From IMG/VR virus record IMGVR_UViG_3300049460_000312, positions 1 to 64,000 of that record: a stretch of 64,000 nucleotides of DNA; one strand, written 5' to 3'. Both the position numbers and the translations under genes were made by a program. Positions 1,551 through 28,851 of the stretch are shown here, in pieces; the stretch's first letter is position 1, and every line of letters begins with the position of its first letter. A model generated the notes under the pieces. It did no database searches, was not told the origin of the DNA, and saw only the letters and a list, made by a program, of their open reading frames with translations.

Positions 1551-2245
1551 ATTCCACCTGTGGGCTGTTGCGGAGGCTCAGTGCGGGCGGACGCCGACGG
1601 ACACACGGGGAAACTGCCGGCGGCACGGTCGGTCACATGATACCCGACGAGTGGCTGGCCGTTCAGGATCAACCCACTGCGCAGGAGTGTCTTCCGCGGA
1701 AAGGCACTATGAAACGCCTGGATGGTGCTGGAAAGTCGCTCCTCCAGTACTGTTTTCATCGCTGCATTGAAGTAGCCTTCACGCAGAGCTTCTTCCACAT
1801 TGCCTAGCGCCTGGCAAAGCTCGATCGCGCGCTGCCGCATGCCAGGCATCCCACCGTTCATATTCGTGAAGTGGAAATCGGCGGTGTTGGAATGCTTCTG
1901 CCCGTAAGTCGCTTTCGGGTACTGATTGCGCCAGTAGCCCGCGGTGCTTTCTTCATAGGCCACAAAGCCATGAAAGCGGGGCTCGGCATCGACGCCGTCA
2001 TGCTCGCCGTTAACCAGATAGTGTCCTTTAATCTCGACCTGATGAAAGACCACTTCTTTGAGCTGCAGATCGGCGCCGGGCTCCAAACCATAGAAGGCGC
2101 TGTGCGAGCGCAACATCCGTTCGGGTGTGGAGTCGCTCGTGTAGCAGAAAGTCACGAGATAGAGTTGCAGGCCGATATGAAAGCGAGCATTCACTTTCTT
2201 CGAGTCGTCGCCTTCGAATTGAGGCAGGGCGGGTTCGTGTGGCAT
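1547..2245 (-). CDS. Hypothetical phage protein
   Basis: 232 aa ORF, ATGA overlap with the DHFR start, AGGAAAGG upstream. Confidence 0.8.
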   Translation of the reverse strand: MPHEPALPQFEGDDSKKVNARFHIGLQLYLVTFCYTSDSTPERMLRSHSAFYGLEPGADLQLKEVVFHQVEIKGHYLVNGEHDGVDAEPRFHGFVAYEESTAGYWRNQYPKATYGQKHSNTADFHFTNMNGGMPGMRQRAIELCQALGNVEEALREGYFNAAMKTVLEERLSSTIQAFHSAFPRKTLLRSGLILNGQPLVGYHVTDRAAGSFPVCPSASARTEPPQQPTGGI

Positions 2246-2281
2246 GGTCGTACTTTTCCTTTCCTTTAAATGGCGAATTGG

Positions 2282-2995
2282 TTAGATATCGCCGGTGGTG
2301 GTTTTACGAACGAATTCCTTGACTGCTTCCAGGTTAAGAAAGGCCACATGGGCCGAGATATTGCGTGCACACACGCCATCGGGTACGGAGCAACGTGCCA
2401 CCCGGGCGGTGTTCTTGTCGAAGATACGGCTGGGGGTAAGCGTTTTGGACCGTAACGCCACGCGCATGGTTTCCCGGTCGGCCTCGTGTTCGGTGCTTTC
2501 GGTGCGCAGCCAGCGACCAAATTGCAGATTCGCTTTGGAAACCAGCTTTTCTTCCGGCGTACTCAGCGGCGCAGCAACATATCGCTCCACCTTGTTAAAA
2601 GGAGAATAAACCCGGAACACGCCGTGCTCTTCTTCCATGGCTTCGCCACGCCGGGTCGCGACGCGGACCTTACCCTGGCTCGCCAGCCAGTTTTCCACCA
2701 GACCACGGGACTGCATGGGCATGACAAAGAACTGGTACTGCGGATGTATGTTCAGCAAGCGCCGCAAGACCAACGCCAGGGCCTTGTAACGCTGGTAGGG
2801 TTTCTCGCGTACCACCAGTTCGTAGAACTCGATGTCGCCACTGGTCGAGGTGTAGTACTGGTTCGTCGCCGGATGGTAAATCAAGATCCCTTCCCAGGCT
2901 TTCGGAATCTCCCGTTCCGGTACACCGTTCACTATCTCCCGCAAGTAGTGACTGATTTGGGACGGGCGAGTGAGTTTCTCATATTCGACAATCAT
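2282..2995 (-). CDS. Hypothetical protein, tandem degenerate GIY-YIG-like family
   Basis: 237 aa; EGILIYHPATNQYY and GVFRVYSPFNKVERYV beta-hairpin-like motifs. Confidence 0.75.
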   Translation of the reverse strand: MIVEYEKLTRPSQISHYLREIVNGVPEREIPKAWEGILIYHPATNQYYTSTSGDIEFYELVVREKPYQRYKALALVLRRLLNIHPQYQFFVMPMQSRGLVENWLASQGKVRVATRRGEAMEEEHGVFRVYSPFNKVERYVAAPLSTPEEKLVSKANLQFGRWLRTESTEHEADRETMRVALRSKTLTPSRIFDKNTARVARCSVPDGVCARNISAHVAFLNLEAVKEFVRKTTTGDI

Positions 2996-3014
2996 GGCGG
3001 TTACTACTATCGTG

Positions 3015-3045
3015 CGGCATAGCCGGAGGGATTACCCCTCCGACC
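3015..3045 (-). terminator. Hairpin with TATGCCG tail
   Basis: Minus strand GGTCGGAGGG-GTAAT-CCCTCCGGCT then ATGCCG, just after the stop of 3058..4398. Confidence 0.65.
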
Positions 3046-3057
3046 ATTTACCGGGTT

Positions 3058-4398
3058 TTAGAACCGGAAGACTTCGTTGTCACTCAGCAGACGTTTCGTT
3101 GACGCCGTGATGACTTTGGAGATCTCCAGACCGAGCGAGTCGTACAGGCCCACCAGCAGCCGGGCAACTCGCATGCGCTGGTTCAGTTCCTTGGCGAGCA
3201 GGTTCTGGAAAGTATGAAGCGCGGTGAAGAACGCTTCAAACGAACCATGGCCGCGCGACAAAGCGATGAACGCATTACGCAGATACTTCGACGGCTGGAT
3301 CAGCCGGGTGTTGATGGTGGTGAGATGCAGGTCCAGTCCTTCGGCTTCGAGCGCTTGCTCGACGACCTTCAGGGTCTTCGACGGCAGGGAAGCCGCTAGC
3401 GCCCGAATCAGCCAGAGCGACAGGTAGTAGTGTTCCGGCCGGATAGTGCGGGCCACGTGCGCGTACTCCACCCGGGTCGGATACTCTCCTTTACGATGCG
3501 GCACCTCCACCAGTCGAGCCAGTGCCATCGCATCAAACTCGCGCACAACCTTATCGTACGCTTGGTTATGCGTTTGCGACTGCTCGCGCGTCACCGTGTA
3601 GTACAGCGCCAGCTCACGCAGCAGATTCTTCGCTTCGTTGGTCAGCCCCACGATGTCGTCAGTGATAATCATGCTGCGGTAGGTGCCGAACTCCGTACCC
3701 ATAATCAGGTTCACGAAGTTAAAGAGCAACTCCTCGCGCGTAACCTGATCGAGGCCGCGTACCGCTGCATCCACACGTCGGAACTCACTTTCCAGCTTGT
3801 CGACATCGAGTGCCCCGTGATAACCCCGAAACTTCTCGAACAACTCCGCCTCACCCACGAAGTTGTAGTGTCCCTCGCGGACCAGGTCGCGATACGGCTT
3901 GTTGGCATCCAGCGGTTTGCCCGGATGGAACAGGCGCGAGAGCTTGGACGGATGCGCTTCCTGTTTGCCGGAGAGGTCGACGTTCTCCGCATCCTGATAC
4001 CGTCCGAGGGCTTGCTTGACGCTATCAGTGACGTTCGGAGCGAAGTCGTCAGCGTCGAGGAGATCTTCCAGCTCCGCATCTTCACCCCGCATCTCAGCCG
4101 CGATCATTTTGGAAAACGCCCCGGCTAGCTTCTGGATGTCATCTTCGCTGGGCGTGTCATCATCTTCCTCGCGGGACGAAACCAGCGTCACTGCTTTGGG
4201 CTGCATCGCGGAGGGATGTTCCTCCTGCCCGCCGTTAGGTTCATCGCCCGCTTTGGGTGGTTGCTTTGCCATGGTTTCCTCCAAGAACGCGGCCACTTCT
4301 TTCGACGTCATTAAAGGCCGTCGATCAGTTTTGACGCGCTTCGATTTCGGTGGTTTCTTAGCCACAGGACTCTCCCTTTCAAGCGGACTGGTTTTCAT
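3058..4398 (-). CDS. Hypothetical helical protein, probable paralogue of 4420..5541
   Basis: 446 aa ORF; low-complexity N-terminus, helical C-terminus alignable by eye with the neighbour. Confidence 0.85.
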   Translation of the reverse strand: MKTSPLERESPVAKKPPKSKRVKTDRRPLMTSKEVAAFLEETMAKQPPKAGDEPNGGQEEHPSAMQPKAVTLVSSREEDDDTPSEDDIQKLAGAFSKMIAAEMRGEDAELEDLLDADDFAPNVTDSVKQALGRYQDAENVDLSGKQEAHPSKLSRLFHPGKPLDANKPYRDLVREGHYNFVGEAELFEKFRGYHGALDVDKLESEFRRVDAAVRGLDQVTREELLFNFVNLIMGTEFGTYRSMIITDDIVGLTNEAKNLLRELALYYTVTREQSQTHNQAYDKVVREFDAMALARLVEVPHRKGEYPTRVEYAHVARTIRPEHYYLSLWLIRALAASLPSKTLKVVEQALEAEGLDLHLTTINTRLIQPSKYLRNAFIALSRGHGSFEAFFTALHTFQNLLAKELNQRMRVARLLVGLYDSLGLEISKVITASTKRLLSDNEVFRF

Positions 4399-17578: not shown

Positions 17579-18043
17579 TTAATGACGGGTAAAGATGCCG
17601 GTAACGCGAACTGTTTCCGGCTGGGGTTCGGTTTGCCGCCAGCGATAGCGTTGACCGCCCTCGATGATGATGCCCTGGTCGTACTGGTCTTCTGCCTGCA
17701 TGATTTCAAGATCCGTCAGGGGCCGCATTGCCTGCCACTGATTTTCGCCAACTCGCGCGAAGAGCCAGTGAAAGTGCAATCCCTCACCGAAACCTACCGC
17801 CATGTCCGGGTTGTCCTGCACCCGAATCAGCTTCATCTTGGGATCAAGACCACGTACTTCCTGACGACCCCACTGACCTCGCTCCTGTGCGTCCAGGCGC
17901 ATCGAACAGGTAGCGAAGTCACACAGCGGGCCGTCGACATGCACACAACTGCCGCCAGCTTTGTCCTTGTAGACGCCACAGAGCTTGACCGGATCGGGTG
18001 GAAATGCAACAAGCTGCTTAAGCCAACCCACTAGCCGCTTCAT
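17579..18043 (-). CDS. Hypothetical protein with a Cys cluster
   Basis: 154 aa; C..C.HVDGPLCDF..C. Confidence 0.75.
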   Translation of the reverse strand: MKRLVGWLKQLVAFPPDPVKLCGVYKDKAGGSCVHVDGPLCDFATCSMRLDAQERGQWGRQEVRGLDPKMKLIRVQDNPDMAVGFGEGLHFHWLFARVGENQWQAMRPLTDLEIMQAEDQYDQGIIIEGGQRYRWRQTEPQPETVRVTGIFTRH

Positions 18044-19122
18044 TGGAACTTCCCCGCTTCTTTTTGCTGCAACTGATGCGGAGTGAGCGGCTCCTGGGTA
18101 TTGATCCCCGGAATCGGCACAGGCCGGGCGGCAATGCTCTTGGCGAGGTCGCTGTGAATCGGATTGCCCTTGAGGTCGTGATCGACGGGCGCCATGACAT
18201 CAGGGACGCTCGTATTTTGTTGCTGCGCTGCGCGCTGCACGATCGACAGCAAGCTTTCGTGACCATGACAGATCTCGTTAGCAAACTGCTTGAACGCCTG
18301 GTACAGGCTATGACTGTCCGGCTGGCCGAGGTTCGTCATCAAGCGCTTGATGATTTCGTCCTGCTCTGTATTGCTGACCCGGTTGATCACCGATGGCTCA
18401 TGGAACTTCGAGGCAGCCATGCCGAGGCGTGCTACCCACGCCTGCGAGCCTTCCTCAGATTGACCGTTCAGGAACAGGCGGGCCTTGAGAGCGTCGGTAT
18501 CCAGCTTACTGAGCTTGGTGCGCGCGTCCTCCGACAGATCAGTCAGATAGGCCCCGTACGTCAGCTGGAAGTCGTGATCGATGTTATCGACCAGGGTGCG
18601 CAGATGTTCCAGTGCCGCAGCACGCTCCGCCACCGGGGCTTCAGCCACTGGCACGAGGTACTTGACCCAGTCTGCTTCGAAAGTGACGTCTTCGCCATGC
18701 GCACGCAGCTTGACATCGCAATCACCGCCCCACTTGGCACGATGGATCAGTTCGTTCAGCTTGTCCTGCACACCATCAGTCACGGCCCGCTTCGGCAGGA
18801 ACCAGCCGCCGTCTTCCGGCACCTGACCCTGTGGCAGCACCACCAGGGTCCCGTCGGGCATCGTCACCAGCAGGTCGCCGAAACCAAAGCGCAACGTCCG
18901 GCCGCCCTGGGTGATGAGGTACAGCTCGTAGTGCTCGTGCGTGACCGGACAGCCGTTGTAGGTGAACGACCAGGGTACACCGTCGACGACGCTTGCGCCC
19001 GACTGATTACGACCGATCATCAGGAAACGATCCCAATTCACGAATCCGGAGCGATGGCTGGGAGCAACCGTGACCTCAAAGTCCGGCAGATCGATAGCAT
19101 TAGACATTCTGCTCTCCTGCAA
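18040..19122 (-). CDS. Multi-domain hypothetical phage protein
   Basis: 360 aa ORF; DGVPWSFTYNGCPVTHE N-domain; start probably at MSNAID. Confidence 0.8.
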   Translation of the reverse strand: MQESRMSNAIDLPDFEVTVAPSHRSGFVNWDRFLMIGRNQSGASVVDGVPWSFTYNGCPVTHEHYELYLITQGGRTLRFGFGDLLVTMPDGTLVVLPQGQVPEDGGWFLPKRAVTDGVQDKLNELIHRAKWGGDCDVKLRAHGEDVTFEADWVKYLVPVAEAPVAERAAALEHLRTLVDNIDHDFQLTYGAYLTDLSEDARTKLSKLDTDALKARLFLNGQSEEGSQAWVARLGMAASKFHEPSVINRVSNTEQDEIIKRLMTNLGQPDSHSLYQAFKQFANEICHGHESLLSIVQRAAQQQNTSVPDVMAPVDHDLKGNPIHSDLAKSIAARPVPIPGINTQEPLTPHQLQQKEAGKFQ

Positions 19123-19343: not shown

Positions 19344-19814
19344 TTAGAGGATGTTGACGACGGAGAATTCTGGGTGGAACCATTCCGGGTGTTGTTCGTA
19401 CACGCGCTCGATCAGGTAGTACGGGCTGCTCGACGTGTAAGCGTTCCGCCCTTCGTTGTCGATCACCAACGTCACGACATCCTTAAGCTTGCTCTGCACG
19501 AGCTGGTGCGGTTCGAGACGACGGGTTTCGACGCGCTCGTCAAGCTTCAGATGCGCCACACCGTGGCCACCGACACCTGTGTTGATCATCAGACGTGCAT
19601 TATCGCGCTGGCGCACCGTTTGCTGGGCCAGAGTCGACTTGCCGGTTTGACGCGGACCGCCGATCGTCAGAACACGGAATTCACGCAACTGCATCAGCGG
19701 ATTGGTGATCAGCTGTTCTTCGATCTGCTTCACGCGAGTCTTGGCTTCGCGCAGGAACACCCAGACGAGATCGTCCCAGGGCATTTCCTTCGGGGGACGG
19801 GAATTCGAATACAT
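19344..19814 (-). CDS. Small P-loop protein
   Basis: Walker A GPRQTGKS; LVIDN Walker-B-like strand; only 156 aa. Confidence 0.75.
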   Translation of the reverse strand: MYSNSRPPKEMPWDDLVWVFLREAKTRVKQIEEQLITNPLMQLREFRVLTIGGPRQTGKSTLAQQTVRQRDNARLMINTGVGGHGVAHLKLDERVETRRLEPHQLVQSKLKDVVTLVIDNEGRNAYTSSSPYYLIERVYEQHPEWFHPEFSVVNIL

Positions 19815-19867
19815 GGTTGGTCTCCAGCTTGTAGGAGTAGGAGGAACTGCAGTTCCTCCCTGTGTTG

Positions 19868-21685
19868 TTAAGCCGCCTGCTTCAGGCGTTCGCAGACTTC
19901 GGCGTACGTGGTCGGGCGCGGAAATGCGCCATTCACGTACATCGCGCGCAGCTCACCCGAGGACGTGATAATGTCCTGGATCGCCATTTGCTGTTCTTCC
20001 AGCTTGACGAAGTCGCCGCGCTCGTTCTTCACGACCTTCAGGAAACCCTTGGCGGACTTCTTGTTAGTGACGCCTTCGGTCTTCGGTGCCTTGAAGAGTT
20101 CGATCACTTCGTCTTCCACCCGCACGGCGGTGGCCTTCACGGCAAAGCCGAAGGTGTCGCGCGTGTTGTGCTGGTACGTGTAGGAGCCGATACCGAACAC
20201 CGTGTTGCAGGAGGCGAAACCCTTGACGTAGAGACGTCGGAGGATTTCATCCGCACGCTCGACCGTGATCGAGTCACCGTAAATCAGACCGACCCGTTCG
20301 TGCAGGACCTTGTAGCCGAGCGACGTCTTGGTGCCGCCGAAGATATCCCACAGCACTTGCACCGCACCTTGTTCTTGCGGCGTGAGCGGCCACTCGGGCA
20401 GCGGGACGATGCAGTAGCCATTGTAGTTCGCCGTGTACCACTTGCCTTGCAGACGCTCGTCGTCTTTGAGAATGGCGCGAACGATTTCGCCACCACCGAA
20501 GTTGACGAGGAAGTCCTTCGGCGCATCGCGCATTTCGTCGGTACTCGACGTGATGCGCAGGAAGTCGTCCTTGCTGTGGACGTAACGACCCGCGAGCACT
20601 TCAACAGGGTCGCCCGAGTCCGGACGGAACACCACCTTGGCCAAGCCCATCTCGTCCGGCTGGCGGGCGAGGATTTCGTTCTTCAGGCTGGCTGCGATCT
20701 CGGTGATCACCTTCCAGAAGTCGAAAGAGTCCGACACCAGCGAGACCACACCGGTCGGATGCTTCTTGGTCAGTACGTCGAAGATGAACTTACGCTCGCC
20801 TTGGGCGCGCAGCTCGTCCATATCGAGGCCGATCTTGTCGTTCGGATAGTGCGCGTGGATCTGCTTGAGCAGCTTGCTGACGTTGAACAGAATGTTCGAC
20901 GTCGCCACGGCGTGTTCGGTAGCGACCACCGAGCAGGCGACGAATTCCTTTTCGACGTTGGCCCCGTACATGTCTTCGACGTAGTCGATGGCCGGCAGCG
21001 TATCGGTGCCCTTGAAGACGATCTGATGACTCGAACCCACCCGTGCCGCATCTTCCGGACCGGAGAGTCCACGGAAGGAGAAGTCATGGCCCTGGATGTC
21101 GACAAACGAGCGATCCACGCCGGTTTTATCGGCCCAGTATTCGAACGTACGGCGATACTCGTAGGCGATGGTCGCGTTGGTGGTCATCTTCCACAGCAGC
21201 GCCGACATCATCGTTTCGAGGTAGTTCACCAGCCAGTAGAACGCCGGATGCGTGTTGTACGTGACGTAGGTCGGCACGTTGATATTCACCCGCTCACCTT
21301 CGGGAAGCCCCAGCACCACGAGCGGCAGGTAGCCGAGGTCGTGCAGTTCCTCGAAGCACTTCACATCCACCCGGTTATCGCCGAGGTAGTATTTCATACG
21401 GCGCGCATAGCGCTTACAGACGGCTTCCTTGGGCTTGCTGAAGAACGAGTTGTGCCAGAGGCCGTTGATCTCGCGCATCACGCCCTGCAGGCCGTAGTTG
21501 ACGATCTTGCCGTCCCAGAAGCGCGACTTTGACTTGTTGTCGACGAACAGACGGTCCGAGCGGTACGTGCCGTTGCTGTAGGTGAAGTTCGTGCCGTCCG
21601 GGTAGAGCGGGCGATGGCCGACTTTGTAGCCGTCGGTAGTGGTGGGGGCGAACAGATGAAACGAAGTATCGTGAGTTTGGTGCAT
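19868..21685 (-). CDS. nadV: Nicotinamide phosphoribosyltransferase-like protein (probable NARP1 Namat)
   Basis: TDGYKVGH..LYP, HDFSFRG, ATEHAV, SLVSDSFD, VFRPDSGDP, GLIYGDSIT, FGIGS, TRDTFGFAVKAT, KKSAKG. Confidence 0.95.
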   Translation of the reverse strand: MHQTHDTSFHLFAPTTTDGYKVGHRPLYPDGTNFTYSNGTYRSDRLFVDNKSKSRFWDGKIVNYGLQGVMREINGLWHNSFFSKPKEAVCKRYARRMKYYLGDNRVDVKCFEELHDLGYLPLVVLGLPEGERVNINVPTYVTYNTHPAFYWLVNYLETMMSALLWKMTTNATIAYEYRRTFEYWADKTGVDRSFVDIQGHDFSFRGLSGPEDAARVGSSHQIVFKGTDTLPAIDYVEDMYGANVEKEFVACSVVATEHAVATSNILFNVSKLLKQIHAHYPNDKIGLDMDELRAQGERKFIFDVLTKKHPTGVVSLVSDSFDFWKVITEIAASLKNEILARQPDEMGLAKVVFRPDSGDPVEVLAGRYVHSKDDFLRITSSTDEMRDAPKDFLVNFGGGEIVRAILKDDERLQGKWYTANYNGYCIVPLPEWPLTPQEQGAVQVLWDIFGGTKTSLGYKVLHERVGLIYGDSITVERADEILRRLYVKGFASCNTVFGIGSYTYQHNTRDTFGFAVKATAVRVEDEVIELFKAPKTEGVTNKKSAKGFLKVVKNERGDFVKLEEQQMAIQDIITSSGELRAMYVNGAFPRPTTYAEVCERLKQAA

Positions 21686-21714
21686 GATGGTGTTTGTGTT
21701 CTTGCTGTTATAGG

Positions 21715-22614
21715 TTAAAGCGGAAACCAGTGGACGCGCCGGAGTTGTTCGTGGTTACGAAACTTCTCGCTATGCAGACGCAATTCACTCGTGCAATCCG
21801 GATGGAACGAATCGGTGGTGTAGATACGATCGAATACGTCGAGTACCGGCTCAAGACCGTAGGAGAAAATCCCGTGCGAGACGAACAGGCTCAGTTCCTT
21901 GCAACCTTCATCACGTAGGATCTTGCCAAGCTGAATGAATGTACGACCACCGTCGCAGATGTCGTCGACGACGATCAGGTTCTTGCCCGTGACATCCCCG
22001 TCCAGACGCGCAGCCGAGACTTCCATCGTCTTCGGGTCCCGTGCCTTGGTGGCTGTGACGTATGGAATGTCGAGTGCTTCCGACAGCGCCTTGATCTTCT
22101 TGACTGCACCAGCGTCCGGTGCGACCAGCATCAGATCACGCGTGTCGAGGCTCAGGATCTGATGTTCGACTACCTGACCGAGCATCTGCTTTTGCGTCGT
22201 GACGAACGATTTGTTGATCACGGCGGCAGCCACGTCGCTATGCGGATCGAACAGCGACACCGATTCCAGCTGCATGGCGTTGAGCATTTGCGCGAACATG
22301 CTCAGCGACAAAGCTTCGCCGACATTGCAAACGCGGTCCTGACGGGCGTACGGCAGATACGGAATGAACACGTGGATCTTCGCGACCGGTGCGATACGGC
22401 GCAGCGCGTCGATGGTCAGGAAAAACGCCATCACCAGATCCGAATTCGTCAGGTGTCCCGTGATCTCAACGCGCTCGCCACGAAACGTCAACGAGAACAG
22501 ATTCTTCACCACGGCTTCCGGCAGACGGACATTCACTTCACCGCCCTTGAAGGTACTGACTTCCACCGGCAGGTTCTGCATGAACACGCCGTTACCAACA
22601 CTAACCTTAATCAT
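21715..22614 (-). CDS. prs: Ribose-phosphate pyrophosphokinase-like protein (probable NARP1 Adps)
   Basis: FKGGEVNV, PYLPYARQDR, DPHS, VAPDAGA, VVDDICDGGRTF, SHGIFS. Confidence 0.95.
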   Translation of the reverse strand: MIKVSVGNGVFMQNLPVEVSTFKGGEVNVRLPEAVVKNLFSLTFRGERVEITGHLTNSDLVMAFFLTIDALRRIAPVAKIHVFIPYLPYARQDRVCNVGEALSLSMFAQMLNAMQLESVSLFDPHSDVAAAVINKSFVTTQKQMLGQVVEHQILSLDTRDLMLVAPDAGAVKKIKALSEALDIPYVTATKARDPKTMEVSAARLDGDVTGKNLIVVDDICDGGRTFIQLGKILRDEGCKELSLFVSHGIFSYGLEPVLDVFDRIYTTDSFHPDCTSELRLHSEKFRNHEQLRRVHWFPL

Positions 22615-22696
22615 GTTTTTACCCGAATGAAAATCAGGCCTGCTATATGTAAAAAGGAAGGAGGGCTGCGGGGAACAGACACCTCCTCCACGAAAC

Positions 22697-23560
22697 TTAG
22701 GCGTCGCCGGGTGACGACTGGTCGAACGCGATCCACGGCTGGTCGTGGCTCTCGCGCGGCTGCCACGTAATCAGCGCAAGATCATCAGCACCTTCCGGCT
22801 TCGGGAGGGACTGATTGCCGTAGAAGATACCGTGCGAGACGATCGGTTGCTCACGACGCGGGGTATCGACGTAATGATGCACGTATTTTTTCGTCGAGAG
22901 ATGCGACTGCGGATCGGGATGAACGTGCTTGGTGAGGTGGAGATTATCTTCACCCGGCTCGGTCACATACACGTCGACATTCAGCAACGGCGAAATGTTC
23001 AGACATGTGAACGACTGCAGCGCCTGAAACAGCTTGAAGCGATTGACACGATAGGTGTAACTCGGCGTCGAAAGAATCACCCGTACGTGTTCAGGGTCAT
23101 TGGTGCTACCCCGTACGTAGAACTCTTTGACAAGCAGATTCGGACTGTCGTTCTCGCTGGGCTTGATCTTCACTGCCGTGACCAGCTCGCCCATGAAGTA
23201 CACCACGTTATCTTCTCGGTCGGCCCAGTTAAAGCCCGACAGGAACAACATGAGACAGTAGGCGTGCTTGCTGTCGATCACGAGATCCTGGCCTTCGCAT
23301 TGCAGCACGAAGTTAGCCTGGGTCTTGCTCGTGAAGCCATCCTTGTCGACCGGTAACCACTTCGGCACGTCGTAGCGGTCGTACTCGGCGTGCGCCTCGG
23401 CGTCGCTTTCCAGCTTCACGATCCGGAAATGCTCATCCGGTGTCAGGACGTTACCGTCCTTGTCCTTGTATTCCGAGAGACCCATGCTGATGGTCACCGA
23501 ACTATTGCGATCCATGCGCCGACGGGATTCTTCCTTTGCCAAACGTTCTGCTTTAGACAC
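22697..23560 (-). CDS. Hypothetical protein
   Basis: ORF 22697..23803; likely GTG start at 23560 with GGAG RBS. Confidence 0.8.
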   Translation of the reverse strand: MSKAERLAKEESRRRMDRNSSVTISMGLSEYKDKDGNVLTPDEHFRIVKLESDAEAHAEYDRYDVPKWLPVDKDGFTSKTQANFVLQCEGQDLVIDSKHAYCLMLFLSGFNWADREDNVVYFMGELVTAVKIKPSENDSPNLLVKEFYVRGSTNDPEHVRVILSTPSYTYRVNRFKLFQALQSFTCLNISPLLNVDVYVTEPGEDNLHLTKHVHPDPQSHLSTKKYVHHYVDTPRREQPIVSHGIFYGNQSLPKPEGADDLALITWQPRESHDQPWIAFDQSSPGDA

Positions 23561-23879
23561 AACCTGCTCCTTCAAGAGTTTCCCCGCTGAAGCGCCACTC
23601 CACGTGTTTCGCATCCATACGGTTTTTGAAATAGAACACCGGCGAGAGCACGTCGTCGAACTTGCGCGGCATGCCATGCAGATACGACCACGAGAACGTG
23701 GTGATACCTTTTGCACGCAGATGCTGGAGTAGCTCATCGATCCACAGATCCAGTGGACGGGTCTCGCTGGTGATGGGCGGGAAAACGACGGTGTACCAGC
23801 CATACGGGGTCGGCCGATCGAAGACGGGCTCTTCTTTCTTGCTGGTATTTACCGGCGTAAGTTTTTTCTGTTTCTCCAC
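23553..23879 (-). CDS. Hypothetical protein
   Basis: 108 aa ORF between thyA and the next gene. Confidence 0.7.
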   Translation of the reverse strand: MEKQKKLTPVNTSKKEEPVFDRPTPYGWYTVVFPPITSETRPLDLWIDELLQHLRAKGITTFSWSYLHGMPRKFDDVLSPVFYFKNRMDAKHVEWRFSGETLEGAGCV

Positions 23880-23886
23880 GACGACC

Positions 23887-24771
23887 TCAGACGGCGAAGG
23901 GATACTGGATGGGCGGGTGAAACGCCGTGTACTTCACTTCGAAGTCATTCACCGTGACCCACGACTCGACATCGGCCAGCGTCTTGATATCCGGGTTGAT
24001 ATCGATGGTCGGTTCAGCCAGGATCGGGCGATCCAGCTGTTCCTGGACCAGGTCCAGCTGGTTGCCGTAAATATGGCAGTTGACATTGCGGTGATGAGCG
24101 TACTTCGGGTTCTTGCCCGTGATCTGCGCCATCAGACGCAGCAGCAGCCACACCTGCACCATGTTCGCAACGGTCCCGAGCGGCCAGTCCGACGAACGCT
24201 GGGTCGAGTTCAGGTACAGGTCGTTACCCAGCAACGAGAACTGGTGTTCGTACATGCACGGACGCAGACATCCCAAGTAGAACATACCTGGGTTCCAGAA
24301 CGTGATAATTTCACCCCGATCGTCTTTGCCGGCCTTCAGGTTGTTGTAGACCTTGTGGAAGAGATCGATGGAATTGTCCGGATTCACATCGTCACGCACC
24401 GGCCAGTTCTTGGCGACTGCGCCGTAGATCAGACCGAGGTCATCCTCACCCTTGCGGTACGGACTGTTCAGCCACGCTTGGTTCTCGTTGGCATTGGCAT
24501 CCCACGACTTGGTGCCGAGGGCGCGCATCTGGGCGGCCGACGTCACGCCCTTGAGATACCCCAGCATCTCGGCGATCGGCAGCTTCACCGGTGCCTTGCG
24601 CGTGGTCACGATCGGGGCCTTGTTCGTCGTGGCATCATAGGTCATGTCGATATTGATCACCGTCCGACAGGCGATACCGGTACGCTCATTCGGGAGATCC
24701 ACCCCGTTGTCGTAAATGTGCTGCAAACCTGCGAGGTACTGCATTTCGGCGCGATCGATAGCGTGGGACAT
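23887..24771 (-). CDS. thyA: Thymidylate synthase
   Basis: ERTG, PIVTTRK, DLGLIYG, LRPCM (catalytic Cys), QRSSD..LG..AN, HIYGNQ. Confidence 0.97.
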   Translation of the reverse strand: MSHAIDRAEMQYLAGLQHIYDNGVDLPNERTGIACRTVINIDMTYDATTNKAPIVTTRKAPVKLPIAEMLGYLKGVTSAAQMRALGTKSWDANANENQAWLNSPYRKGEDDLGLIYGAVAKNWPVRDDVNPDNSIDLFHKVYNNLKAGKDDRGEIITFWNPGMFYLGCLRPCMYEHQFSLLGNDLYLNSTQRSSDWPLGTVANMVQVWLLLRLMAQITGKNPKYAHHRNVNCHIYGNQLDLVQEQLDRPILAEPTIDINPDIKTLADVESWVTVNDFEVKYTAFHPPIQYPFAV

Positions 24772-24862
24772 GGCTGTGATGACAAAAAAATAAAAGGTTG
24801 GAATTCGGGAGAAGCAGCGCGAAGCTGCTCCTCTCCACATACAACCTTCAGGCCGGTATTTT

Positions 24863-27483: not shown

Positions 27484-28170
27484 TTAGCGCAGATGCGGAA
27501 ATACTTGTGACAATGCACCCGCTGCGCGGACTTCTTTCGAGCCGCGTTCAAAGAACGAGTCAAGCCGCGTGATGTTCAGGAGGTTGTCGCCGACGCCCTG
27601 ACTGGCCAGTCGGCGCTTCGCATCTTCGAGCTCTGCTTCCACCACATTTGACCAGACAAAGTTCTTGCCAGTCTTGTCAGCGCGCCAGCCGTCCGAGGAT
27701 TCCGTATCGGTCGCCCAACTCGTCGGATACGGGAGCATGACGATCGTAATCCGCTTCACTTGTCGCCACAGCAGGGCTAACAAGGCTTGATCACATTGCT
27801 CGCGCTTTTCCTTGATCGTCTGCAGCGTGAGTGCGTTGCTGAAAACGGTGAAGTAATAACCTGCGTAATCGTACGGCGAACGATCAGCGAGAATCAGATT
27901 CGGCTGATGGCGGCTGGCGGCATCGTGACTCACACCCCGGTAGAGGCGTTCGATGTTATCGGACATCACCTGATGCTGAAAATTCCGGTTGAATTCCGGG
28001 TCCTTCAATGCATCGCTTTCGTTGGTAAGGCCGTGCCTGGCATAGGTCTCGCGAGTAGACGAGTAATACGCCATTGTAGTCAGACCACGACCGGAGGCCA
28101 TCTTGGCACACGTATCCATCAGCGTGGTCTTGCCGACCGACCCTGCCCCTGCAAACATTAAGAGTTCCAT
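27484..28170 (-). CDS. P-loop nucleotide kinase (AAA_28/dNMP kinase-like)
   Basis: FAGAGSVGKTT and LADRSPYDY. Confidence 0.85.
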   Translation of the reverse strand: MELLMFAGAGSVGKTTLMDTCAKMASGRGLTTMAYYSSTRETYARHGLTNESDALKDPEFNRNFQHQVMSDNIERLYRGVSHDAASRHQPNLILADRSPYDYAGYYFTVFSNALTLQTIKEKREQCDQALLALLWRQVKRITIVMLPYPTSWATDTESSDGWRADKTGKNFVWSNVVEAELEDAKRRLASQGVGDNLLNITRLDSFFERGSKEVRAAGALSQVFPHLR

Positions 28171-28338
28171 TTCGAGTACGCTCAGTATGGTGACAAAAAT
28201 AAAGAAAGGAGAATTGACCAGCTGAAAGCTTAGTGTCATATAAGCTTTTTGCCGGTAAAAACTTCTTTCTCCCTGTCACTGAAGCGCATTGGAAATGTCA
28301 CGCCAAATAAATAAGAGGGCCCGTAGGCCCTCCCTCTC

Positions 28339-28851
28339 TTAGGTAGTAACTTTGTCGGAGGCTCCTACTTCCGGCGTAATCGACTTCAGGGTATTGGTCA
28401 GTGCCATCCGCATAGCTTGAATCCGCGAGTCGTTCAGTGGATCGCGCGGACCTGCTTCGATAATGCGCAGGGCGCTTCTCGGTAACTCCCAGGTGTAGTG
28501 CATCGCATCGCTCACTGCGTTTCGCAGTGTATTGTCGTAGCGGTCCCACTCCGCCCGAAAGTAATGGATCACCGTGCCGCAATAAAGTTTATCTTGCAGC
28601 GGTGCGTTGTCTGCGGTAACCGTTTCAGTCACTAGCGGTAACTTTTCGATGTTGCGCAAACGCATTCCTACCTTTTCGAGACTTTCTTGCTGTAGCGTCT
28701 GTATCATGGTGGCGCCACGCTCTACCACTCCACCTGGGAAGCAGTAGTGCGCAATGCGGCCATGTTCATTCCATACCCGTCCCAGACAGATCCGGCCATT
28801 CTTAACGATCACTACGCGTGCTGTGGCTCGCAGAGGAAGTTCTTTGGACAT
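28339..28851 (-). CDS. Nudix-fold protein with a degenerate Nudix box
   Basis: RATARVVIVKNGRICL, FPGGVVERGATMIQTLQQESLEKVG. Confidence 0.8.
   Translation of the reverse strand: MSKELPLRATARVVIVKNGRICLGRVWNEHGRIAHYCFPGGVVERGATMIQTLQQESLEKVGMRLRNIEKLPLVTETVTADNAPLQDKLYCGTVIHYFRAEWDRYDNTLRNAVSDAMHYTWELPRSALRIIEAGPRDPLNDSRIQAMRMALTNTLKSITPEVGASDKVTT

What the first reader, a model, noticed from the sequence alone, without database searches (positions are those of the whole stretch)
19868..22614. NARP1-type NAD+ reconstitution pathway (PRS-like + NAMPT-like pair)
Seen: adjacent co-oriented PRS-like and NAMPT-like genes 29 bp apart, with no NMNAT gene in the window. The NAMPT-like protein carries an insertion of roughly 60 aa after RPDSGDP. 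Known: in phages this pair constitutes NARP1. Adps makes ADPR-PP from ADP-ribose and Namat joins nicotinamide to it, restoring NAD+ depleted by Thoeris/SIR2/DSR/SEFIR defences. Inference: this phage counters NAD-depleting abortive infection, which a phage nucleus would not protect against.
Basis: partly seen in the sequence, partly recalled or inferred. Interest (0 to 1): 0.6.

Follow-up and report, generated by a model that had tools for sequence, protein, structure and literature searches.

The report
NARP1 NAD+ rebuilding pair, jumbo phage

Summary
Two intact genes lie on the minus strand 29 bp apart: a PRS-like gene (21715-22614, 299 aa) and a NAMPT-like gene (19868-21685, 605 aa). The window is the start of a complete 283,373-bp Ralstonia jumbo phage. 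It is collinear with FLC1-1B and related to RP12 (Ripduovirus, Chimalliviridae).

Both proteins group with experimentally validated NARP1 enzymes (SPbetaL1, FADO, Bas63, ICP1). They do not group with cellular Prs or with the NMNAT-linked Nampt of NARP2. The NAMPT-like protein has the published Namat adenine-clamp motif (GSYTYQHNTRD, with His where Tyr/Phe is usual) and the clamp-loop Arg. The PRS-like protein has a PP loop identical to that of Bas63 Adps. No NMNAT, RyR or Macro gene was found in the whole genome.

The ~60-aa insertion is real, but it lies at a site whose length varies widely across Namats. Two further insertions exist.

The homologous pair in RP12 is already listed as Adps/Namat in the supplement of the original NARP1 paper. 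Verdict: a new member of a known kind. Enzyme activity is inferred, not shown.

The parts
21715..22614 (-). adps: PRS-like ADP-ribose diphosphokinase candidate, 299 aa (P0001)
   Evidence: ORF and translation. PRPS domains. Inside the clade of Namat-adjacent PRS-like proteins that holds four validated Adps. 37.5% identical to Bas63 Adps and 37% to ICP1 Adps.
19868..21685 (-). namat: NAMPT-like nicotinamide ADP-ribose transferase candidate, 605 aa (P0002)
   Evidence: ORF and translation. NAPRTase / NF006629 / phrog_448. Best solved relative is SPbetaL1 Namat 9w5x, E 7e-112, against about 1e-36 for mammalian Nampt. AF2 model pLDDT 92.9; best fold match Namat 9w5x with target TM 0.94. Namat clade.
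21686..21714 (-). 29-bp spacer between adps stop and namat start
   Evidence: Sequence read. No terminator-like site on this strand. Co-transcription is inferred.
20156..20188 (-). Namat clamp-helix (SCH) motif GSYTYQHNTRD, residues 500-510
   Evidence: Translation. Fits the published Namat consensus GSX-Phi-X-Phi-X-Phi-TRD (PMC12774641). Validated Namats read GSF/YTYQY.TRD; KVP40 and RSP15 Nampt read GGGLLQQLDRD and GGALLQDLQRD. Position 7 is His, not Tyr/Phe.
21509..21559 (-). Clamp loop (SCL), residues 43-59. Arg45 aligns with the adenine-stacking Arg40 of SPbetaL1 Namat. The loop is 9 aa longer than in SPbetaL1.
   Evidence: Alignment, translation, rule for the SCL stacking residue (PMC12774641).
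20375..20554 (-). ~60-aa insertion after RPDSGDP (residues 378-437), predicted as a small alpha/beta subdomain
   Evidence: No counterpart in 9w5x. Model pLDDT 65-86 with strands and helices. Site of variable length. Sequence similarity only to FLC1-1B.
20789..20893 (-). ~29-aa insertion after the catalytic-His motif ATEH (residues 265-299), predicted to extend a helical hairpin
   Evidence: Similar length in RP12, Phabio and IMG/VR loci L118, L060, L126. Sequence similarity only to FLC1-1B and RP12.
21937..21966 (-). Adps PP loop DDICDGGRTF (residues 217-226)
   Evidence: Identical to validated Bas63 Adps. ICP1 Adps has DDICDGAASF and E. coli Prs has DDMIDTGGTL. Role of the PP loop in ATP donor binding from PMC13586617.
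22045..22047 (-). Codon of Adps Lys190, aligned with the catalytic Lys185 of ICP1 Adps
   Evidence: K185A abolishes ADPR-PP formation (PMC13586617). This Lys is also conserved in Prs, so it shows an intact enzyme and says nothing about specificity.
22651..22691 (-). Hairpin followed by a U-rich run, between the upstream gene's stop and the adps start (terminator-like)
   Evidence: Sequence. Fold -24.6 kcal/mol, z -1.96. Weak evidence; function inferred.
19839..19860 (-). Strong hairpin 7 nt after the namat stop codon, with no U run
   Evidence: Sequence. Fold -20.1 kcal/mol, z -4.2, 0 of 200 shuffles as stable. Function inferred.

Best explanation
The pair is a NARP1 module in a nucleus-forming-type Ralstonia jumbo phage. 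When a host NADase defence cleaves NAD+ into ADP-ribose and nicotinamide, the PRS-like enzyme (Adps) transfers the beta-gamma pyrophosphate of ATP onto the terminal ribose of ADP-ribose, giving ADPR-PP. The NAMPT-like enzyme (Namat) then joins nicotinamide to ADPR-PP, releasing pyrophosphate and giving NAD+ directly, so no NMN adenylyltransferase is needed. Shown here: gene integrity, adjacency, family and clade membership, presence of the published specificity motifs, and absence of any NMNAT in the complete genome. Inferred: the two enzyme activities, co-transcription, and the anti-defence role.
For: - **Namat side, solved structures.** The closest solved relative is SPbetaL1 Namat, by sequence (E 7e-112, against about 1e-36 for mammalian Nampt) and by fold.
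- **Namat side, tree.** A 97-row tree splits 89 Namat-type proteins from 8 Nampt-type proteins with SH-aLRT 100. The 89 include validated SPbetaL1, FADO, Bas63 and the partner of ICP1 Adps. The 8 include validated KVP40 Nampt and the host-genus NadV. The window protein sits deep in the Namat side. A site-heterogeneous mixture-model (LG+C20+F+G4, PMSF) tree gave the same result.
- **Namat side, residues.** All catalytic-core residues are present, along with the clamp motif GSYTYQHNTRD and the clamp-loop Arg45 (rules from PMC12774641).
- **Adps side.** All 74 Namat-adjacent PRS-like proteins form one clade (SH-aLRT 99) that excludes 18 cellular Prs. That clade holds four validated Adps and the window protein. 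The PP loop is identical to Bas63 Adps, and the catalytic Lys and acceptor residues are present.
- **Linkage.** 66 of 80 IMG/VR Namat loci carry a PRS-like gene within 5 kb, and none carries an NMNAT.
- **Genome.** It is complete and has no NMNAT. KVP40 (NARP2) has no PRS homologue.
- **Literature.** The RP12 homologues are listed as 'Adps homologs' and 'Adps-associated' Namat by Osterman et al..
Against: - No enzyme assay or infection experiment exists for this phage or any Chimalliviridae NARP1.
- Clamp position 7 is His, not the usual Tyr/Phe.
- Three lineage-specific insertions could alter behaviour.
- H. ducreyi NadV is deposited as a nicotinamide phosphoribosyltransferase and was crystallised with NAM and NMN. 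It nests inside the Namat clade, 57% identical to SPbetaL1 Namat. Clade membership alone therefore does not prove a preference for ADPR-PP. That enzyme is solitary and has lost the aromatic clamp residues (GAQTYQRNTRD).
- Namat also retains PRPP activity in vitro (PMC12774641).
- The cellular Prs sample in my tree is narrow: E. coli plus small-genome MAG relatives.
Confidence: 0.85

Rival explanations
1. Plain nicotinamide salvage. The PRS-like enzyme makes PRPP, the NAMPT-like enzyme makes NMN, and a host NMN adenylyltransferase (NadD, or the NadM-Nudix-like gene next to the host's nadV) finishes NAD+.
For: - Both proteins pass generic Prs and NadV family models.
- Namat enzymes keep PRPP-to-NMN activity in vitro (PMC12774641).
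- H. ducreyi NadV sits inside the Namat clade.
- The host genus carries an NMNAT-like gene next to its own nadV.
Against: - The PRS-like protein is in the Adps clade, not among cellular Prs, and has the Adps-type PP loop.
- The NAMPT-like protein keeps the aromatic clamp residue at position 3 and the clamp-loop Arg. The solitary H. ducreyi enzyme has lost both aromatic clamp positions.
- Phage Nampts that work through NMN carry their own NMNAT nearby, and this genome has none.
Confidence: 0.07
2. Same chemistry, different purpose. The pair mainly maintains NAD+ for the metabolism of a large phage, recycling ADP-ribose from any source, rather than countering a defence system.
For: - The pair lies in a nucleotide-metabolism neighbourhood: thymidylate synthase at 23887-24840, a P-loop kinase-like ORF and a NUDIX ORF.
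- A paper reports that jumbo phages carry NAD+ synthesis genes (PMC11662467, title and abstract only).
Against: - In every case tested experimentally, NARP1 acted as a counter-defence (Osterman et al.; PMC12774641; PMC13586617).
- Its input, free ADP-ribose plus nicotinamide, is exactly what NADase defences produce.
- A SIR2 NADase defence specific for Chimalliviridae is known (PMC12931631).
Confidence: 0.06
3. A diverged enzyme pair. Because of the three insertions and the His at clamp position 7, it has changed substrate, regulation or location, for example another ADP-ribose derivative or a link to the phage nucleus.
For: - The insertions total about 100 aa and evolve fast. The 60-aa insert matches only FLC1-1B.
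- His at clamp position 7 is shared by the jumbo-phage subclade: window, FLC1-1B, RP12, Phabio and L118.
Against: - All catalytic and clamp-contact positions other than position 7 are kept.
- The insertion site varies in length across the whole Namat clade, including validated Bas63 Namat.
- The core of the model superposes on Namat with target TM 0.94.
- Positions with Phe, Cys or Met at clamp position 7 also occur among Adps-linked homologues.
Confidence: 0.02

Closest known systems
NARP1 (Adps + Namat) of phages SPbetaL1, Bas63, FADO and ICP1 (Osterman et al. 2024; PMC12774641; PMC13586617)
   Same: - Two adjacent co-oriented genes, with the PRS-like gene first.
- Same clades for both proteins.
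- Same catalytic cores.
- Namat clamp motif and clamp-loop Arg are present, and the Adps PP loop is identical to Bas63.
- No NMNAT in the genome.
   Different: - The Namat is 605 aa against 492-498 aa in SPbetaL1, FADO and ICP1, because of insertions of about 60, 29 and 9 aa.
- Clamp position 7 is His instead of Tyr.
- The host phage is a 283-kb Chimalliviridae-type jumbo phage.
- Identity to validated enzymes is only 28-38% for Adps and 34-38% for Namat.
The homologous pairs of Ralstonia phages FLC1-1B/FLC4-3B and RP12/RP31, and of Pseudomonas phage Phabio
   Same: - Direct orthologues. FLC1-1B is 76% identical for both proteins. RP12 is 59% (Adps) and 69% (Namat) identical.
- Same gene order and the same His at clamp position 7.
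- The RP12 and RP31 pairs are already listed as Adps/Namat homologues in Osterman et al.'s supplementary tables.
   Different: - In GenBank they are annotated only as ribose-phosphate pyrophosphokinase and nicotinate phosphoribosyltransferase.
- RP12 has a shorter, unrelated insert sequence.
- In Phabio three small genes separate the pair.
NARP2 (Nampt + Nmnat, Vibrio phage KVP40) and cellular NadV-NadM salvage
   Same: Same NAPRTase-family fold and catalytic core. The end product is NAD+ made from nicotinamide.
   Different: - The window protein is only 27-37% identical to KVP40 Nampt over fragments and lies across a long, fully supported branch.
- Those Nampts have GGxLLQ..(D/Q/T)RD in place of the aromatic clamp.
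- Five of the eight outgroup Nampts have an NMNAT gene in their fetched locus. For KVP40 the label comes from the literature. The CPR and RB43 loci showed none. None of their loci carries a PRS-like gene, and a whole-record search of KVP40 found none.
Haemophilus ducreyi NadV (pNAD1; PDB 9ke8/9keo)
   Same: It falls on the Namat side of the family, 57% identical to SPbetaL1 Namat and E 1.6e-85 to the window protein.
   Different: - It is solitary on a 5.6-kb plasmid with no Adps.
- Its clamp motif reads GAQTYQRNTRD, so both aromatic positions are lost.
- It is deposited as a nicotinamide phosphoribosyltransferase and was crystallised with NAM and NMN.

Membership tests
Adps (NARP1 step 1) | PRPS-like two-domain architecture | tested here: met
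   Pribosyltran_N, Pribosyltran and Pribosyl_synth; TIGR01251 152 bits against a cut-off of 113; phrog_619 E 1.6e-83.
Adps (NARP1 step 1) | Belongs to the clade separate from cellular Prs (Osterman et al.) | tested here: met
   It lies in a 74-row clade (SH-aLRT 99) with validated SPbetaL1, FADO, Bas63 and ICP1 Adps. 18 cellular Prs fall outside. Caveats: quick tree; Prs sample limited to E. coli and small-genome MAGs.
Adps (NARP1 step 1) | A Namat homologue within ten genes | tested here: met
   The next gene downstream, 29 bp away on the same strand.
Adps (NARP1 step 1) | Remodelled PP loop for ATP donor binding, conserved among Adps (PMC13586617) | tested here: met
   DDICDGGRTF is identical to Bas63 Adps. 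ICP1 has DDICDGAASF and E. coli Prs has DDMIDTGGTL. SPbetaL1 and FADO Adps differ (DDLSS.GGTF), so the motif is typical of a subgroup and is not universal.
Adps (NARP1 step 1) | Catalytic Lys and acceptor-site residues (ICP1 F18, R87, H121, D161, K185, D212, D213) | tested here: met
   F22, R91, H125, D167, K190, D217 and D218 are present. These are shared with Prs, so they show an intact enzyme and say nothing about specificity. ICP1 F92 is Cys96 here.
Adps (NARP1 step 1) | Loss of the C-terminal alpha11-alpha12 regulatory/filament module of PRPS | tested here: inconclusive
   The protein has 299 aa, against 315 for E. coli Prs. It ends in a tail that aligns poorly with the Prs C-terminus. 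No structure was predicted for it.
Adps (NARP1 step 1) | Converts ADP-ribose + ATP to ADPR-PP + AMP | not testable with these tools
   Needs an enzyme assay with LC-MS.
Namat (NARP1 step 2) | Nampt-like catalytic core, including the catalytic His | tested here: met
   D18, Y20, F202, R205, D228, H258, R354, D356 and G470-D471-S472 align with SPbetaL1 D13, Y15, F189, R192, D215, the catalytic His, R306, D308 and G360-D361-A362.
Namat (NARP1 step 2) | [quoted passage not shown] | tested here: inconclusive
   The motif is GSYTYQHNTRD. The frame and the Phi positions (T, Q, N) fit, and position 3 is Tyr. Position 7 is His rather than Tyr/Phe. His can stack on adenine, but this was not tested. In SPbetaL1, single clamp mutants lost only 1.3-1.7-fold activity.
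Namat (NARP1 step 2) | Clamp-loop stacking residue (Arg/Lys/Tyr at the third position) | tested here: met
   Arg45 aligns with SPbetaL1 Arg40. The loop is 9 aa longer.
Namat (NARP1 step 2) | Clade of Adps-associated homologues, distinct from Nmnat-associated Nampt | tested here: met
   with SH-aLRT 100 on the split. Caveat: H. ducreyi NadV nests in this clade, so the clade is necessary but not sufficient.
Namat (NARP1 step 2) | Prefers ADPR-PP over PRPP and makes NAD+ directly | not testable with these tools
   Needs a competition assay.
NARP2 (Nampt + Nmnat) | An NMN adenylyltransferase encoded by the same phage | tested here: not met
   PF01467 finds nothing in the complete genome, while it is found in all 14 control genomes. 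tblastn with five NMNAT-Nudix proteins gives no hit below E 0.3. Their HMM hits only the NUDIX ORF, at E 0.005.
NARP3 (PnuC + NadR-like) | A NadR-like bifunctional NMNAT/NR-kinase enzyme | tested here: not met
   There is no PF01467 domain in the genome. An ORF with a marginal AAA_28 match (27484-28239) has no NadR or NMNAT match in NCBIfam or among solved structures. PnuC was not searched.
NARP1-AP and RyDEP-extended NARP1 | A Macro-domain ADPR-1''-phosphatase (Adpp) or a RyR-domain glycosidase in or near the operon | tested here: not met
   PF01661 and PF02026 find nothing in the genome. For PF14519 no control genome matched either, so that result is uninformative. The flanking ORFs have no such domains.

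The most novel reading that the evidence does not exclude
The Chimalliviridae-lineage Namat has His at clamp position 7, a longer clamp loop and two extra surface elements totalling about 90 aa. It may be a functional variant tuned to the nucleus-forming life style, for example in timing, location or regulation, or in use of another ADP-ribose derivative. Phage NARP1 of this kind could also explain the unexplained rebound of NAD+ and fall of ADP-ribose seen minutes after Avs5 fires against jumbo phages (PMC12931631).
Probability: 0.1. Interest if true: 0.55.

Novelty: new member of a known kind. Interest (0 to 1): 0.25.

Why it matters
This adds one more NARP1 carrier. It shows that the Ralstonia jumbo phages of the FLC1-1B/RP12 group, whose GenBank annotation reads only 'ribose-phosphate pyrophosphokinase' and 'nicotinate phosphoribosyltransferase', carry a full two-gene NAD+ rebuilding module and no NMNAT.

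For nucleus-forming phages, NAD+ depletion is a defence that a DNA-shielding compartment cannot stop, and a dedicated SIR2 NADase system against them is known. A NARP1 module in this family is therefore a sensible counter-measure and worth testing. The result also matters to those choosing Ralstonia phages for biocontrol, since host NADase defences may not restrict these phages. It does not open a new question.

Tried and rejected
- **Expression and co-transcription.** I did not try another route.
- **Bacterial relatives.** The search for related loci in genome contigs returned only two short MAG contigs. I therefore drew cellular Prs from relatives of that MAG plus E. coli. This is a narrow sample.
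- **Cellular NadV.** A search of 301 genomes of that MAG's phylum gave a single full-length NadV, in G082. Other Nampt references came from plasmid and phage records.
- **Careful tree.** The careful IQ-TREE search did not finish in the time allowed. The quick tree under the site-heterogeneous mixture model (LG+C20+F+G4, PMSF) was used instead.
- **AAA_28 ORF as an NR kinase.** The ORF at 27484-28239 scores 27.6 bits against a cut-off of 27. It has no NadR, NMNAT or RNK match in NCBIfam or PDB, and only a weak thymidylate-kinase PHROG match. The idea is rejected for lack of support.
- **NUDIX ORF as a NatV-like NMNAT-Nudix.** It is a stand-alone 170-181-aa protein with weak MutT-like matches. 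Rejected.
- **Origin of the 60-aa insert.** No separate Pfam domain was found. Its sequence is similar only to FLC1-1B. Its origin is unresolved.
- **Promoters.** The sigma-70 scan found nothing. It is not informative for a phage of this type, which I expect from general knowledge to use its own RNA polymerases.
- **Large protein searches.** They were not run, because the family scans, solved structures and trees left nothing open.
Full report
**What is there.** The finding's coordinates hold two intact ORFs on the minus strand. One is a PRS-like gene at 21715-22614 (299 aa). The other is a NAMPT-like gene at 19868-21685 (605 aa). A 29-bp spacer separates them, and the PRS-like gene lies upstream. 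The first protein matches the two PRPP-synthetase domains, TIGR01251 and phrog_619. The second matches NAPRTase, NF006629 and phrog_448.

**The genome.** The window is the first 64 kb of a 283,373-bp virus record with direct terminal repeats, rated 100% complete. The pair is 77.6% identical in DNA to Ralstonia phage FLC1-1B and 74% to RP12/RP31. A second 8-kb stretch matches FLC1-1B at 81.7% with nearly the same offset, so the genomes are collinear. RP12's genus Ripduovirus and the next relative's genus Phabiovirus are both placed in Chimalliviridae, the nucleus-forming jumbo phages.

**NAMPT-like protein: closest relatives.** Its closest solved relative is the SPbetaL1 Namat crystal structure, at E 7e-112. 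Mammalian Nampt scores about 1e-36. An AlphaFold2 model built on 77 sequences (pLDDT 92.9) superposes best on the same Namat entries, with target TM 0.94.

**NAMPT-like protein: trees.** I built a 97-row tree. It included the validated Namats of SPbetaL1, FADO and Bas63, the partner of the validated ICP1 Adps, 80 IMG/VR loci, the validated KVP40 Nampt, other phage Nampts, and cellular NadV from Ralstonia, Cupriavidus, Shinella and a small-genome MAG. The tree splits into 89 Namat-type and 8 Nampt-type rows with SH-aLRT 100 on both sides. The window protein sits deep in the Namat side, next to FLC1-1B, RP12, Phabio and a 310-kb IMG/VR contig. A 48-row tree under a site-heterogeneous mixture model (LG+C20+F+G4, PMSF) gave the same picture.

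- The window protein reads GSYTYQHNTRD.
- The validated Namats read GSF/YTYQY.TRD.
- KVP40 and RSP15 Nampt read GGGLLQQLDRD and GGALLQDLQRD.
- Arg45 aligns with the stacking Arg40 of SPbetaL1, and all catalytic-core residues are kept.

The one departure is His at position 7. It is shared with FLC1-1B, RP12, Phabio and a few IMG/VR homologues.

**PRS-like protein.** It is 37.5% identical to Bas63 Adps, 37% to ICP1 Adps, 30% to SPbetaL1 Adps and 28% to FADO Adps. In a 92-row tree, all 74 PRS-like proteins that lie next to a Namat homologue form one clade (SH-aLRT 99). That clade contains the four validated Adps and the window protein, and 18 cellular Prs fall outside it.

I aligned it to the ICP1 Adps structure paper's residue list (PMC13586617). 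The window protein has the catalytic Lys (K190) and the acceptor residues. Its PP loop, DDICDGGRTF, is identical to Bas63 Adps and unlike E. coli Prs, which has DDMIDTGGTL. Most of these residues are shared with Prs, so only the PP loop and the clade placement discriminate between the two.

**Is there an NMNAT?** No.
- PF01467 finds nothing in the complete genome, while it is found in all 14 control genomes.
- tblastn and an HMM built from five NMNAT-Nudix proteins find only a weak match to a stand-alone NUDIX ORF.
- Phage Nampts RSP15 and BUDD, and the cellular NadV of Ralstonia, Cupriavidus and Shinella, each have an NMNAT-like gene beside them.
- KVP40 has no PRS homologue.
- Among the 80 IMG/VR Namat loci, 66 have a PRS-like gene within 5 kb and none has an NMNAT. 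Seven of the 14 exceptions have under 500 bp of upstream DNA on their contig.

The host genus's own NadV is only about 30% identical to the phage protein, so the phage gene is not a recent capture from the host.

**The insertions.** The ~60-aa insertion after RPDSGDP is real. It spans residues 378-437 and has no counterpart in SPbetaL1 Namat. The model gives it as a small alpha/beta subdomain with pLDDT 65-86.

It is not a special mark of this protein. The distance from RPDSG to the next conserved motif is 41-42 aa in the Nampts where both motifs were found and 54-56 aa in the shortest Namats. It takes many values up to 174 aa in other Adps-linked homologues. The window has 116 aa and validated Bas63 Namat has 131 aa. 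The insert sequence is recognisably similar only to that of FLC1-1B. The site is therefore a fast-evolving hot spot.

- About 29 aa after the catalytic-His motif (residues 265-299). A similar length is seen in RP12, Phabio and three IMG/VR homologues.
- A clamp loop that is 9 aa longer.

**A caveat worth recording.** Haemophilus ducreyi NadV is deposited as a nicotinamide phosphoribosyltransferase and was crystallised with NAM and NMN. It falls inside the Namat clade and is 57% identical to SPbetaL1 Namat. It is solitary on the 5.6-kb plasmid pNAD1, with no Adps. Its clamp motif reads GAQTYQRNTRD, so both aromatic positions are lost. Clade membership alone therefore does not prove a preference for ADPR-PP. 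Linkage to Adps and an intact clamp carry more weight, and the window protein has the first and most of the second.

**Context.**
- Upstream of adps there is a hairpin followed by a U-rich run. Seven nucleotides after the namat stop there is a strong hairpin (-20.1 kcal/mol, z -4.2). This suggests a two-gene unit, but it is inference only.
- No RyR-domain or Macro-domain accessory gene of the extended NARP1 variants was found.
- A SIR2 NADase defence, Avs5, acts specifically on Chimalliviridae and blocks nucleus formation. NAD+ rebounds within minutes for unknown reasons (PMC12931631).

**Novelty.** NARP1 was described in 2024. The RP12 and RP31 homologues of this very pair appear in that paper's supplementary tables 'Adps homologs' and 'Namat homologs', the latter labelled 'Adps-associated'. 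This is a new member of a known kind.

**Limits.**
- No activity, expression or infection data exist for this phage.
- The cellular Prs sample was narrow.
- The trees are quick searches.

Noticed in passing
window 18040-19122 (-) and 19344-19814 (-): The gene just downstream of namat looks split. RP12 ORF210 (376 aa, Walker-A GGPRQSGKT, phrog_31185, function unknown) matches the window in two pieces in different reading frames: residues 6-148 at 19347-19787 and residues 202-345 at 18634-19077. In FLC1-1B the homologue matches in a single reading frame but is annotated as two genes (gp227, gp226), which implies an in-frame stop. This could be a decaying gene or a real two-gene arrangement.
   Followed up: partly
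window 27484-28239 (-) and 28339-28851 (-): A P-loop kinase-like ORF (AAA_28, 27.6 bits against a cut-off of 27; weak thymidylate-kinase PHROG match) lies next to a stand-alone NUDIX ORF (weak MutT-like matches). Both are about 6 kb from the NARP1 pair on the same strand. There is no evidence that either acts on NAD+ metabolites.
   Followed up: partly
window 23887-24840 (-): A thymidylate synthase gene (PF00303, E 3.9e-57) lies two genes upstream of adps. The same neighbourhood is seen in FLC1-1B and Phabio.
   Followed up: no
window 22697-23803 (-): The 368-aa ORF directly upstream of adps matches no Pfam, PHROG or NCBIfam family. RP12 has an RtcB-like gene at this position, and FLC1-1B has a 275-aa hypothetical gene.
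   Followed up: no
L144 (H. ducreyi plasmid pNAD1) 3828-5315: H. ducreyi NadV nests inside the phage Namat clade, 57% identical to SPbetaL1 Namat. It sits on a small replicon that carries filamentous-phage-like genes. It is solitary and has lost both aromatic clamp residues. It looks like a Namat-lineage enzyme that reverted to, or kept, Nampt function.
   Followed up: partly
L021 (Burkholderia sp. M701 plasmid pM7012) 5067-7647: A 582-kb conjugative plasmid carries a prs-like plus Namat-like pair. The Namat-like protein is 45% identical to the window's. A NUDIX gene is divergently placed beside the pair. This is a plasmid-borne NARP1 candidate.
   Followed up: partly
L022 (R. solanacearum megaplasmid) 1847-4398: The host species has its own nadV next to a 345-aa NMNAT-Nudix-like gene annotated as ADP-ribose pyrophosphatase. 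This is the cellular counterpart of NARP2. Its NadV is only about 30% identical to the phage protein.
   Followed up: partly
L023, L024, L032, L033 (contigs of MAG G001): The only genome contigs matches were two 1.7-kb contigs of a small-genome MAG. Each carries fragments of an Adps-like and a Namat-like gene. They are probably phage contigs binned with the MAG.
   Followed up: no
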